Source: Octopus sinensis
Lineage: Eukaryota
Assembly (NCBI RefSeq): GCF_006345805.1
Contig: NW_021827761.1
Coordinates: forward strand, 1-10,108
Direction: 5' to 3'
Length of the DNA: 10,108 bases
A model generated the notes under the pieces. That model did no database searches and was not told the DNA's origin. It saw nothing but the letters and a program-made list of their open reading frames with translations. Each line of letters opens with the position of its first letter. The first letter of the stretch is position 1. Below are positions 7,157 through 10,108 of this stretch, piece after piece. The translations under genes and the position numbers were made by a program.

Positions 7157-7270
7157 TTTAAAAATGAATCAAAAATAGAAATGGACTGGCTATTGCAACG
7201 GTTCTCGAACGCCGTTATCCGGGGGAACAGTTTGGCGATTCGCCAGGCCTCTAGCCTTCCCTTTGATTAA
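7157..7270 (+). mobile_element. Second CRE-type non-LTR retrotransposon 3' coding fragment
   Basis: Reads FKNESKIEMDWLLQRFSNAVIRGNSLAIRQASSLPFD*, the same QRxSxAxxRGN terminal motif as 3324-3428 but a divergent family. It forms a GC-rich island in AT-rich DNA. Confidence 0.65.
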
Positions 7271-7701
7271 TCGATATTAATTGATAGACAACTGATATAA
7301 TGTTAAGTTAAAAAAATTGATATTAACTTTAAATTTTATAATTTACCAATTAACAACTTCGAAGTATTTTTTGTGACCGGTTTTTGAGCGGACCAGGTGC
7401 CTATATTAAAATTCAAAATGGATAAACTAATTTATTTGGTTTAATGGATAAACTAAAATAAAAATTTGTTTTATTTTTTATTTTTTTGCAGAAAATTAAA
7501 AAAATCAAAGAGTTTAGGGGAGGCATTTATTCAAAAAAACATTTGCTCACTCAGATTTTTTTGTATAGAACGATAAAATCAGAAACAGCTAAAGAAATTA
7601 TTTAAACATTGACTAATTTATTGTATAAAACTAATATGCTCAACATAAAGAAATACTGCAGATTTTGTGTTACTATTTAATAAACAATTACTATTTAACT
7701 T

Positions 7702-7917
7702 TTATATTTCAAGTAAAAAACTTCCGCTATACCGTCTTTTTGTTATACTGGCAATGATTTTGACTTTTTCGGAAAGATTTTCGTACTCACCCAAAGAAAG
7801 AGTTTGCCGCGCATCGCAGCGAAATTGTTTTGGTTGGGGATGCACATTGATCAATATCCCATATGCTCCAACAAAAACCGCTGCTTTTGAAAGTGCTGGA
7901 ATAATATCTTCATTTCT
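7702..7917 (-). pseudogene. C-terminal fragment of a class I-beta DAHP synthase (3-deoxy-7-phosphoheptulonate synthase; KDO8P-synthase fold family)
   Basis: The stop-free minus frame reads RNEDIIPALSKAAVFVGAYGILINVHPQPKQFRCDARQTLSLGEYENLSEKVKIIAS...* and matches the I-beta terminal motif (..AA.A.GADG++IEVHP.P..A.SD..Q.L...EF..L). The metal-ligand E of IEVHP is replaced by N. The N-terminal ~200 aa are absent. Confidence 0.8.
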
Positions 7918-8850
7918 CTAATTTTGGGTCTTCTTTATTGAGGATTGCATCCGTAAAGGTCCTCGCTTTTCTAAAATGAGACGTCCTTCTACTGACTCAA
8001 CATGGGAAATTTAAGGCAGCTGTTTCCGTAGTCAATAGGTGAACACATTGAATTATGCTGAACTTCTACAATTGGCTGAACTTCTACAATAATTGTCTCA
8101 TCTTTGAGCAATTCACGTAAACTCCGAATTGTGATTCCATATTGGAATCCTTTAAGAGGAGGAACAATGATGCGATCGCAATAACTGAGGAGAATATTGG
8201 CAGCGCTTGCTTCAACGATCTGTCCTTCCAGATTGGTCATAAAAACTTCATCAAATTTTGACTGAATGGTATTTTTTGTCACCAAAGCCGACTTTAAGTA
8301 ACAGCCTCCAGTTTTTGTTGTAATAGCGTCCTTCGCAATCTTCTTCCATGGTGAGATCTTTATTAAGTCCTTTTTCCTGGTCCAAAAGAGGTGAACAAGC
8401 CACCATGTAAATTTATAGATGGAATGTTAATTTGTTATAGTTGAGTTGTAACATTGGAAAAACAAACTAGCAGATGTAGAAATCACCTGTTCGTTGATTC
8501 CGAATAATCAAATCTTGTAGTTTCTTTTTTGAAATCTTTGAAAAAATTTTCAAAATTCCAACTCATGATCTGTAATAAAACGCATGAGCCTTTAATATGG
8601 TCTTTTAAGCAAAAGATACATCATCTCGAATATGGCCACGTAATCCTGCGTAAAAGTAAGTTTAAAATAAAACGTAAAACGTTTGATAAATGAATCCAAA
8701 CAAAATTAACGAAACCAAAAGAGATAGTTAAATGGTTAAATGTGTTTAGTTAAATGGGAAAAGTAACCCCATCACCTTAAAAAGGCCTGCTTTTTAATTT
8801 AAAATCTTTGTTATTAAGTTTATACTCTTTCTTCAAGTAATCGAATTACG
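7910..8850 (-). pseudogene. ilvE: Prokaryote-type branched-chain amino acid aminotransferase (class IV PLP-dependent) pseudogene
   Basis: Across stops and frameshifts the order is LN*KAGLF(E)G|LRG ... DHIK(R)LM ... IIRNQRTGDFYI ... KISPWKKIAKDAITTKTGGCYLKSALV (catalytic K) ... DEVFMTNLEGQIVEASAANIL ... VPPLKGFQYGIT ... TETAA ... VESVEG ... RGP ... FTDAILNKEDPKLEK*. This is colinear with E. coli-type IlvE. Confidence 0.88.
8646..8775 (-). other. Putative 130-nt GT-AG spliceosomal intron in the ilvE pseudogene
   Basis: On the minus strand, G|GTGATG...CTTACTTTTACGCAG|GA TTA CGT splits the Gly codon of the conserved FEG(I/L)R motif. It has a pyrimidine-rich 3' end, and removing it restores colinearity. 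Confidence 0.6.
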
Positions 8851-8852
8851 TA

Positions 8853-8878
8853 CAGTAGACTGTCGACAAATTGATAGC
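8853..8878. mobile_element. Orphan Tc1/mariner (pogo-like) TIR that truncates the 5' end of ilvE
   Basis: TA (8851-8852) is followed by CAGTAGACTGTCGACAAATTGATA, which resembles CAGT-starting pogo TIRs. IlvE similarity stops at this point. No partner TIR was found in the window. Confidence 0.5.
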
Positions 8879-9115
8879 CAGGCCGCCTTTAATCACCTCA
8901 ATTGTTTAAATCCCAATTCTTTTATTTTGCATCACCAGTGTCAAACCTGTTTTCTACTTTGAGCGCATCCAAATTTTTCTTGAAGAATTTTGATACAATT
9001 GTGTCATGGTGTATCTCCACGGACAGCTTATTGTTGAGGCAATTCCTAAAATAAACATAGAATATCTATTGACTGTTCCTGTAAAAATGATTTGGGTTTT
9101 TGAGTCATTGGGAGA

Positions 9116-9900
9116 AATATCTATTCAAAATACTTTCTTAACTTACGATTGAAAAATGATCAGAGACATCCAAAACCAAATTTCGCCAAAAATGACTTTA
9201 CTGCGAAGCAATTGTCTATGATAAATCAACAAACCAAAAAATACCCAGAATTTATGTCTGGATTTATCAGAGACCCGTCCGATGTCACGCCATCTGAACT
9301 ATATACTCAATTAAATGTGTTATAACCAATAATTCAAAAACACGATAATAAAACTCGGTCAATACACACTACGAAACCGTATTATGTGCGTAGTGAGTGA
9401 ACATTTTGTCATAAAGTGCACCAAAAGAGTTATAAGGCTTATTCAAAGATTTATCAATTTTTATCTAACAAAGAACAGTGAAAAAAATCCGTTAAAACAT
9501 TTATCGGAATGCATCGATCTCATATCTTAAGTCGTTTTACTTAAAATATAAAAGTGAAAAAAACCGTTAGGAGGAACCACTGAAAGTAATCTTAGAAATA
9601 TGAAGAAAATTGCTTGACAAACACGCACCTACGAGAAACCATTGTTGCTATAAAGATTAGCACGACTCTTTGTTTGAATTTCATAAAATAGAGAATAACT
9701 GGAAATAGTACCATTGGGCAGTTTACACAATAACGCAAGTAAACATGATTAACGGACGAGTCATAAATGACGTTAAAATCAGCCAGAAATTTTTGTAAAT
9801 AGCTATTTAATATGCAAATTTCAACACATTGAAGAGGCATTTGATTAGTTCTGGAAGTACTAATTTAAGATTTCTAAACTTTGTCAAATCATTGGAATGA
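9116..9900 (+). pseudogene. Possible heavily decayed long ORF (perhaps a MULE-like transposase)
   Basis: Long stretches stay in one frame with sparse stops. The segment NFNTLKRHLISSGSTNLRFLNFVKSL loosely recalls the MULE 'LK..L....N.R...+V..L' region. The identification is weak. Confidence 0.2.
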
Positions 9901-10108
9901 CGATAGTCCAAACAATATTGACAATAAGACTACACTAGGTGCAATAAAAACCGTTTTTTTTAATACGGCATATTTTGCAAAGATAACCGTGATTTTTCTT
10001 TGTCGATATGGAAAGGGATCATTAAATTACCCCCAAATCAATTTTGTTATATTTTTTTTGTATTGTGTTATATGTCTAAATTAAAAATTTTAATTACACG
10101 AGCGCAAT

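What the first reader, a model, noticed from the sequence alone, without database searches (positions are those of the whole stretch)
7702..7930. Hidden class I-beta DAHP synthase C-terminus joined to the end of ilvE
This 72-codon stop-free frame is absent from the ORF track, which lists only its antisense. It matches the first enzyme of the shikimate pathway in its bacterial/archaeal I-beta form; fungi use I-alpha, plants type II, and animals generally lack the pathway. It begins where IlvE homology ends (~7910-7917), on the same strand, with its N-terminal part missing. IlvE can catalyse the final Phe/Tyr transamination, so the pair may be the collapsed remnant of a transferred aromatic amino-acid operon or of an ilvE-aro fusion gene. 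KDO8P synthase is the alternative identity, but the CD..Q.L pattern favours DAHP synthase.
Basis: partly seen in the sequence, partly recalled or inferred. Interest (0 to 1): 0.78.

Follow-up and report, generated by a model that had tools for sequence, protein, structure and literature searches.

The report
Relics of two bacterial-type genes
Two short, broken pieces of bacterial-type amino-acid-synthesis genes (the tail of a DAHP synthase and the middle of an IlvE transaminase) lie side by side next to an ordinary eukaryotic gene. The matches are real, but the pieces look like dead remnants of foreign DNA, not a working gene, fusion or operon.

Summary
The core observation holds. The minus-strand frame 7705..7917 (71 codons, TAA at 7702-7704) encodes the last ~61 residues of a class I-beta DAHP synthase (NCBIfam 4e-13, Pfam above gathering score, T. 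maritima DAHPS 7e-8). It fits DAHPS better than KDO8P synthase. No other DAHPS piece exists in the window.

About 160 nt upstream, in a different frame, lies the middle third of a prokaryotic-type IlvE (profile 141-241 of 307; 8070..8363). DAHPS is therefore not joined to the end of ilvE: both genes are truncated, and the metal-ligand Glu of DAHPS is Asn.

The host is a eukaryote I could not identify. It has PGM3 with tiny introns, a pogo transposase and 32% GC.

Neither fragment has a close relative among billions of proteins (at most 51% identity for the DAHPS piece). None of 81 bacterial DAHPS loci has ilvE within 6 kb, and real aro operons use a class I/II aminotransferase.

Best reading: a non-functional mosaic relic of bacterial-derived DNA in a nuclear genome. 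The operon or fusion idea is unsupported. Interest is modest.

The parts
7729..7911 (-). C-terminal ~61 residues of a class I-beta DAHP synthase (profile positions 275-335 of 336). The metal-ligand Asp and the conserved H, G and Q are kept. The metal-ligand Glu is Asn, and GADG is GAYG.
7702..7917 (-). The stop-free frame holding the DAHPS piece: 71 codons plus TAA. The last ~8 codons and the first 2 lie outside the homology.
7918..7920 (-). In-frame TAG that closes the DAHPS frame upstream. The 30 codons above it in the same frame show no DAHPS signal.
7912..8069 (-). Unassignable spacer between the two homologies. It contains the end of the IlvE frame (stop at 7989-7991).
8058..8093 (-). 18-nt in-frame tandem duplication (15 nt exact; peptide VEVQPI/VEVQ) at the 3' edge of the IlvE homology. 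It is a post-origin slippage mutation.
   Evidence: read directly
8070..8363 (-). Middle third of a prokaryotic-type (type I) branched-chain aminotransferase IlvE, profile 141-241 of 307. The Schiff-base Lys motif (TTKTGGCYLKS) is kept, while EGxGEN is degraded to EASAAN.
7992..8426 (-). 145-codon stop-free frame that contains the IlvE piece. It is longer than chance gives (0.06 such runs expected per shuffled window).
7694..7718 (+). Left arm of a 25-nt inverted repeat (23/25 with 9535-9559). It overlaps the last codons and stop of the DAHPS frame. Its relation to the relic is unproven.
9535..9559 (-). Right arm of the same inverted repeat. The pair brackets a 1.87-kb segment holding both gene pieces.

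Best explanation
The region 7.7-8.4 kb holds a non-functional mosaic relic of prokaryote-derived DNA in the nuclear genome of an AT-rich eukaryote. It has two short same-strand pieces: the middle third of a type I ilvE and the last fifth of a class I-beta DAHP synthase gene.

Shown: both homologies; both truncations; different reading frames with stops between; replacement of the catalytic metal-ligand Glu; eukaryotic flanks; base composition close to host coding DNA.

Inferred: the pieces came in by horizontal transfer. The donor is either an unsampled or fast-evolving bacterium, or a once-functional host-adapted transferred gene. They were brought together either at integration (end-joining of non-contiguous donor fragments, as in organellar and endosymbiont DNA inserts) or by later deletions. 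They need not have been neighbours in a donor operon. Nothing is made from them now.
For: DAHPS and IlvE matches are significant at profile level. Only 61 of 336 DAHPS positions and about 100 of 307 IlvE positions are present. No further piece of either gene or of other aro genes is in the window.

The pieces are in different frames with stops at 7918-7920 and 7989-7991. A column that is Glu in at least 90% of relatives, and aligns with E298 of T. maritima DAHPS, is Asn. The GADG Asp is Tyr.

The flank is a eukaryotic PGM3 with short introns, and a pogo DDE transposase lies on the same 10-kb window.

GC of the pieces is 0.38-0.40 with GC3 0.30-0.36. Host exons are 0.32-0.38 with GC3 0.25-0.31, so the pieces are ameliorated or AT-rich from the start.

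All relatives found are prokaryotic-type. For the DAHPS piece none exceeds about 51% identity. There is no ilvE-aroF synteny in 81 loci.
Against: The DAHPS piece is not clearly degenerate. It scores 76 bits on a C-terminal HMM against a median of 79 for 80 bacterial enzymes, though that HMM and those loci were selected by similarity to it. It has no internal stop or frameshift.

The 145-codon IlvE frame is longer than chance. So decay is young, or some constraint persists.

No donor lineage can be named. No reads, transcripts or sister genomes were available, so contiguity, silence and age are all untested. The apparent homopolymer frameshift in PGM3 hints that the assembly may contain indel errors.
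Confidence: 0.6

Rival explanations
1. Collapsed remnant of a transferred aromatic amino-acid operon, or of an ilvE-aroF fusion gene. In this reading ilvE and the DAHPS gene were neighbours or fused in the donor, and one deletion removed the 3' end of ilvE and the 5' four-fifths of the DAHPS gene.
For: Same strand, 160 nt apart, in the order ilvE then DAHPS. From general knowledge of E. coli, IlvE can transaminate phenylpyruvate.
Against: 0 of 81 I-beta DAHPS loci (80 bacterial genomes plus 1 metagenomic contig) have an IlvE homologue within 6 kb, using E. coli IlvE verified against PDB 1I1K. In the contexts of the closest relatives aroF is the first gene of aroF-aroB-aroA-aroC. In the context that also has CM, PDT and PDH, the aminotransferase is class I/II. 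No aroB, aroA, aroC, CM or PDT remnant lies downstream. The frames differ, and IlvE also lacks its N-terminal 140 positions.
Confidence: 0.1
2. Cargo of a mobile element: the 25-nt inverted repeat at 7694-7718 / 9535-9559 marks the ends of a 1.87-kb non-autonomous DNA transposon or foldback element. Such an element would carry captured gene fragments and insert them next to PGM3. This is compatible with the best explanation as the route of arrival.
For: The pair matches at 23/25. Only 1 of 30 Markov shuffles of the window gives any such pair, and 0 of 200 shuffles match the arm. The left arm abuts the end of the DAHPS homology. A pogo transposase is 3 kb away.
Against: There is no target-site duplication (TA or other) at the ends. 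The arms are short and AT-rich. No other copy is available, and no transposase lies inside. A partial direct copy at 9459-9487 suggests a dispersed short motif instead.
Confidence: 0.12
3. Assembly artefact: bacterial contaminant reads were joined to host sequence.
For: Bacterial-type sequence sits inside a eukaryotic contig. A homopolymer frameshift in PGM3 suggests imperfect consensus.
Against: The pieces are only ~180 and ~290 nt and are broken. They are flanked on both sides by AT-rich host-like DNA and have host-like GC3. A contaminant would give intact ORFs and usually close database relatives. Here the best identity is about 51% among 1.8 billion representatives for the DAHPS piece, and no word-sharing relative exists for either piece.
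Confidence: 0.08
4. Still in use: one or both frames are exons of a host transcript, either a new chimeric protein or a regulatory RNA. The TAG just upstream of the DAHPS frame would then be part of a 3' splice site (aaaatTAG|AGA), like the PGM3 acceptors.
For: The DAHPS piece is well preserved. The IlvE frame is unusually long. The sequence around 7918-7920 is acceptor-like.
Against: Neither piece can fold as its parent enzyme: the barrel and three of the four metal ligands are missing or replaced, and the IlvE domains are incomplete. No start codon or compatible donor site gives the DAHPS frame within the intron sizes seen in PGM3 (about 24-45 nt). No expression data exist.
Confidence: 0.07

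Closest known systems
Class I-beta DAHP synthase (AroF/AroG type; Thermotoga maritima 1RZM, Pyrococcus furiosus 1ZCO, Aeropyrum pernix 1VS1)
   Same: The last ~61 residues align without gaps...AAxAxGAxGxxxExHPxPxxAxxDxxQxL... The metal-ligand Asp and conserved His, Gly and Gln are kept. The fragment scores like real enzymes over this stretch.
   Different: Only the final beta-alpha unit is present; positions 1-274 are absent. The Glu ligand is Asn and the GADG Asp is Tyr. There is no start codon. At most 51% identity to any known sequence.
KDO8P synthase (KdsA), the sister I-beta family
   Same: Shares the C-terminal motif; matches at 3e-9.
   Different: 13 bits weaker than DAHPS. All 59 nearest relatives are DAHPS by NCBIfam.
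Type I branched-chain aminotransferase IlvE (fold-type IV PLP enzymes; PDB 5CE8, 4WHX; E. coli 1I1K)
   Same: Profile positions 141-241, including the Schiff-base Lys motif and the following strand-loop.
   Different: The N-terminal 140 and C-terminal ~65 positions are undetectable. The piece is about half as well conserved per residue as a true member. It is too diverged for pairwise BLAST with E. coli IlvE. PabC and D-amino-acid aminotransferase models score far lower.
Nuclear insertions of bacterial DNA and decayed horizontally transferred genes in eukaryotes (for example Wolbachia inserts in insects and nematodes, and foreign pseudogenes near transposons in bdelloid rotifers; from general knowledge)
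   Same: Fragmentary prokaryote-type coding sequence, non-contiguous pieces juxtaposed, next to host genes and transposons, with composition approaching the host's.
   Different: The donor is unidentifiable, the host is unidentified, and only ~0.5 kb is recognisable.
Reported shikimate-pathway genes of microbial origin in animal genome assemblies (Nematostella; discussed in PMC4237138)
   Same: A bacterial-type first-pathway-step gene found in a eukaryotic assembly.
   Different: Here it is a 61-residue dead fragment, not an intact gene, and the host may not be an animal.

Membership tests
Class I-beta DAHP synthase (PF00793 / NF006421) | Significant match to the family profile | tested here: met
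   4e-13 NCBIfam. Pfam 27.9 bits against GA 25.5 for the peptide alone, and 23.4 bits in the whole-frame scan. 63 bits with my own HMM. This is far below the full-length cut-off (335 bits) because only a fifth of the protein is there.
Class I-beta DAHP synthase (PF00793 / NF006421) | Complete (beta/alpha)8 barrel of about 260-340 residues in one ORF | tested here: not met
   Only HMM positions 275-335/336 are found in any of six frames of the 10-kb window. The 30 codons upstream in frame are no better than shuffles.
Class I-beta DAHP synthase (PF00793 / NF006421) | Four metal ligands Cys/His/Glu/Asp (T. maritima C102, H272, E298, D309; residue roles recalled from the 1RZM literature, numbering checked) | tested here: not met
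   Asp is present. Glu is replaced by Asn at a column that is Glu in at least 90% of relatives. The Cys and His regions are absent.
Class I-beta DAHP synthase (PF00793 / NF006421) | Closer to DAHPS than to KDO8P synthase | tested here: met
   49.3 against 36.4 bits. 59 of 59 nearest relatives score best as DAHPS.
Type I IlvE (fold-type IV aminotransferase, PF01063 / NF005146) | Significant match to the family profile, better than to PabC or DAAT | tested here: met
   PRK06606 3.3e-12, 46 bits. pabC 23.5 bits, ilvE_II 21.5 bits. Pfam 43.6 bits against GA 28.5.
Type I IlvE (fold-type IV aminotransferase, PF01063 / NF005146) | Schiff-base lysine | tested here: met
   TTKTGGCYLKS aligns with vmaKatGiYlnS of PDB 5CE8.
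Type I IlvE (fold-type IV aminotransferase, PF01063 / NF005146) | Both domains, about 300 residues, in one ORF | tested here: not met
   Only profile 141-241/307 is present. Candidate upstream pieces gave no hit even at E<=10, and joining them added no score.
Bacterial aro operon or ilvE-aroF fusion | ilvE next to an I-beta DAHPS gene in prokaryotic genomes | tested here: not met
   0 of 81 loci within 6 kb. The contexts of the best relatives lack it.
Bacterial aro operon or ilvE-aroF fusion | Other aro/phe/tyr genes adjacent, or one continuous reading frame | tested here: not met
   No other family appears in six frames of 6880-10108. Operon proteins give no tblastn hit. The frames differ and stops lie between them.
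Horizontally acquired pseudogene in a eukaryotic nuclear genome | Prokaryote-type sequence physically linked to genuine eukaryotic genes | tested here: met
   PGM3 with spliceosomal-type introns ends 830 nt away, and a pogo DDE_1 transposase is on the same window. Linkage rests on the assembly only.
Horizontally acquired pseudogene in a eukaryotic nuclear genome | Read-level proof of the junctions; presence or absence in sister species | not testable with these tools
   The window's ORFs are not on record in the assembly collection. No reads were available.
Horizontally acquired pseudogene in a eukaryotic nuclear genome | Phylogenetic nesting inside a donor clade | tested here: inconclusive
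   All relatives are prokaryotic. The top genome hits lean to Clostridia-type Firmicutes, but identities are flat at 45-50% across phyla and 61 residues cannot resolve a donor.

The most novel reading that the evidence does not exclude
The relic is the last visible trace of a once-working, host-adapted bacterial-type amino-acid biosynthesis module (shikimate entry step plus branched-chain or aromatic transamination) in an unsampled, fast-evolving eukaryotic lineage, possibly an animal. It may have arrived inside the inverted-repeat-bounded element. Intact paralogues or further aro/ilv genes would then exist elsewhere in that genome.
Probability: 0.08. Interest if true: 0.65.

Novelty: new member of a known kind. 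Interest (0 to 1): 0.3.

Why it matters
Taken at face value this is one more example of prokaryotic DNA debris in a eukaryotic genome. It is useful mainly as an annotation note: do not call a gene here.

It would matter more under three conditions:
- The host proves to be an animal.
- Intact shikimate or ilv genes of the same origin exist elsewhere in its genome, because animals are thought to lack this pathway.
- The inverted-repeat-bounded segment turns out to be a mobile carrier of foreign gene fragments.

The good preservation of the DAHPS tail, combined with the absence of any close relative among billions of proteins, is the one mildly puzzling feature.

Tried and rejected
1. Word-indexed homologue searches with each fragment found nothing usable. 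The exhaustive phmmer search gave only distant DAHPS. Its top hit, P0001, is a repeat-protein artefact.

2. I thought the DAHPS homology continued upstream across the TAG ('LILEKRG' resembling 'ILCERG', and in another frame 'RTFTD...EDP' resembling 'RTFE...DPSH'). The HMM score is -2.5 and 1585 of 2000 shuffles do as well. Rejected.

3. I thought IlvE N-terminal pieces lay at 8486-8705 in other frames ('IFCLKDH', 'DYVAIFEMM'). They gave no profile hit alone or concatenated. Rejected.

4. A tblastn hit of P0013 at 1026-1109 (E=8e-4) was not seen by the DAHPS HMM. Treated as chance.

5. Host identification failed. Three window ORFs are not on record. PGM3 is 38-43% identical to animals, fungi and plants alike. 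A literature search on the palindrome in the transposase gave nothing.

6. Metagenome and viral scans gave one distant bacterial DAHPS locus (L001) and no viral match.

7. A ciliate-type stop reassignment was considered. PGM3 exons contain no in-frame TAA or TAG and use CAA/CAG, so the standard code was kept.

8. A NeuB/sialic-acid synthase identity was considered. No NeuB hit was found for the peptide.

9. Literature confirmation of the metal-ligand numbering was not found in the library. It rests on my recollection plus the alignment numbering.

Full report
**What is in the sequence**

On the minus strand a frame is open from 7917 down to 7705 (71 codons). It is closed by TAA at 7704-7702 and bounded upstream by TAG at 7920-7918. 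The ORF lister shows it only as a 50-aa TTG-started ORF, next to an 84-aa antisense ORF.

An open run of this length is not remarkable in this AT-rich window: about 10 runs of 71 or more codons are expected per shuffled window and 21 are seen. The case therefore rests on homology.

**The DAHPS match is sound**

- NCBIfam places residues 3-62 on positions 277-336 of the 338-position class I-beta DAHP synthase model PRK08673, at E=4e-13 and 49.3 bits. The best KDO8P synthase model reaches 3e-9 and 36.4 bits.
- Pfam DAHP_synth_1 scores 27.9 bits, above its gathering score of 25.5.
- The best solved structures are the Thermotoga maritima enzyme (1RZM/3PG8/1VR6, about 7e-8) and the Aeropyrum pernix enzyme 1VS1.
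- An exhaustive phmmer scan of 1.8 billion representatives gave 114 hits at E<=1e-3, none below 1e-10, with 31-52% identity. The top hit is a repeat artefact.
- All 59 next-best relatives score best as DAHPS rather than KDO8P synthase.
- An HMM I built from 17 full-length relatives finds exactly one domain in the six-frame translation of the whole window: positions 275-335 of 336 at 7911..7729, 63 bits.

So the fragment is the last fifth of a class I-beta DAHP synthase and nothing more. My impression that the homology continued upstream across the TAG was tested and rejected.

**The neighbour**

A 145-codon open frame (8426..7992), in a different phase, contains a class IV aminotransferase match.

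- Pfam Aminotran_4 gives 43.6 bits against a gathering score of 28.5.
- NCBIfam PRK06606 (IlvE) gives 3.3e-12, covering profile positions 141-241 of 307, that is about 8363..8070.
- PabC and ilvE_II models score about half as much.
- The best structures are prokaryotic BCATs (5CE8, 2.4e-5), and the Schiff-base lysine motif is kept.
- Candidate N-terminal pieces in other frames gave no profile signal alone or joined. The C-terminal ~65 positions are also undetectable.
- An 18-nt in-frame tandem duplication sits at the 3' edge of the homology (8058-8093).

Supported IlvE homology stops near 8070, its frame closes at 7991-7989, and about 160 nt of unassignable sequence separate it from the DAHPS piece. 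This is the middle of IlvE, not its end.

Six-frame Pfam and NCBIfam scans of 6880-10108 find only these two families. Proteins of real aro operons find nothing else in the window.

**Setting**

The window is eukaryotic.

- A PGM3 gene lies at 5187-6874 on the plus strand. It aligns to PGM3 of animals, fungi and plants through frame changes and short inserts that behave as introns of roughly 24-45 nt.
- A pogo/Tigger transposase (DDE_1 plus HTH_Tnp_Tc5) occupies 3934-4980.
- PGM3 is only 38-43% identical to any sequence, equally for animals, fungi and plants.
- The window's ORFs are not on record in the assembly collection.

The host lineage therefore cannot be named, and whether it is an animal is unknown.

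**State of the fragments**

The DAHPS piece keeps the invariant Gly, His, Asp and Gln of its relatives. It has Asn where at least 90% of relatives have Glu, and Tyr in the GADG motif. By the numbering, the Asn aligns with E298 of the T. maritima enzyme and the kept Asp with D309. From my recollection of the structural literature these are two of the four metal ligands (I could not find a paper in the library). The other two ligands lie in the missing part.

Apart from this the piece is not obviously decayed. On a C-terminal HMM it scores 76 bits, against a median of 79 for 80 bacterial enzymes. That comparison is biased, because the model and the loci were chosen by similarity to it.

The IlvE piece is weaker, at about half the bits per residue of a true member, and is invisible to pairwise BLAST with E. 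coli IlvE.

GC is 0.38-0.40 in the pieces (GC3 0.30-0.36), 0.32-0.38 in PGM3 exons (GC3 0.25-0.31), and 0.29-0.32 in the flanks. The pieces are thus compositionally close to host coding DNA.

**Origin and the operon idea**

I fetched 80 bacterial loci encoding I-beta DAHPS, with 6 kb on each side, plus one metagenomic locus. The best identities to the fragment are 45-50% and are spread over Firmicutes/Clostridia, Gracilibacteria, Bacteroidota, Calditrichota and Acidobacteriota. No donor can be named.

None of the 81 loci contains an IlvE homologue by tblastn with E. coli IlvE.

The genomic contexts of the best relatives are instructive:
- P0004 heads aroF-aroB-aroA-aroC in a spore-forming Firmicute.
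- P0002 heads aroF-CM-PDT-PDH-aminotransferase-aroB-aroA-aroK-aroC, where the aminotransferase is class I/II, not class IV.
- P0003 is a truncated DAHPS tail in a bacterial contig.

The proposed 'collapsed aromatic operon' or 'ilvE-aro fusion' therefore has no support from synteny, from reading frames or from neighbouring remnants.

**Best explanation**

This is a dead mosaic relic of prokaryote-derived DNA. Two non-contiguous gene pieces were brought together either at integration or by later deletions, and both now lack most of their parent proteins.

Its relative youth, or residual constraint, together with the lack of any close relative, suggests one of two sources: an unsampled fast-evolving donor, or a transferred gene that lived for a time in the host lineage before being lost.

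The rivals are the collapsed operon, cargo of a transposon, an assembly chimera and exonisation. They are listed with their tests; none is excluded outright without reads, transcripts or sister genomes.

**An unexplained detail**

A 25-nt inverted repeat (7694-7718 / 9535-9559, 23 of 25) brackets a 1.87-kb segment that holds both pieces. Such a pair arose in only 1 of 30 Markov shuffles, and the arm matched in none of 200 shuffles. It has no target-site duplication, and I could not search for other copies.

**Verdict**

It is a new instance of a known kind of thing, of modest interest unless the host genome turns out to hold intact relatives.

Noticed in passing
window 5187-6874 (+): PGM3 (phosphoacetylglucosamine mutase) gene with very short introns (about 24-45 nt, e.g. 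6146-6169). It is only 38-43% identical to any PGM3 in animals, fungi or plants, so the host is a divergent or unsampled eukaryote.
   Followed up: partly
window 5297-5300: A run of 4 A where 5 would keep the PGM3 frame: YGTAGYRGCADTLK | TTFFKVGLFA aligns without gap to other PGM3. This is either a homopolymer error of the assembly or a frameshifted PGM3.
   Followed up: partly
window 3934-4980 (+): Pogo/Tigger-type transposase ORF (DDE_1 3.8e-31, HTH_Tnp_Tc5 1e-6). A perfect GC-rich palindrome (about 4692-4720, catgcggcccgcgggccgcatg) lies inside its C-terminal part. 27-nt direct repeats at 3466-3492 and 5052-5078 (96%) flank it.
   Followed up: partly
window 1500-2160 (+): Degenerate frames with a pogo-like 'NGxLYRFKK' motif suggest a second, decayed pogo-type element. 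Only a weak Myb_DNA-bind_5 hit (0.003) was obtained.
   Followed up: partly
window 7694-7718 and 9535-9559: 25-nt inverted repeat (23/25), statistically unusual for the window, bracketing the two gene relics. There is no target-site duplication. A partial direct copy lies at 9459-9487.
   Followed up: partly
window 7036-7108 (+): GC-richer stretch with tRNA-like D- and T-arm motifs (…TCTAGTGGTATGATTC…GGTCCCGGTTTCAATTCCCGG…). ARAGORN and Rfam (E<=1) find nothing. It is perhaps a decayed tRNA gene or SINE head.
   Followed up: partly
window 8058-8093: 18-nt tandem duplication (15 nt exact), in frame, inside the IlvE relic.
   Followed up: yes
L083 5013-5255: A bacterial contig carries an 80-aa ORF that is also just the C-terminal tail of an I-beta DAHPS behind an unrelated N-terminus. 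Truncated tails of this gene therefore also occur in bacteria.
   Followed up: no
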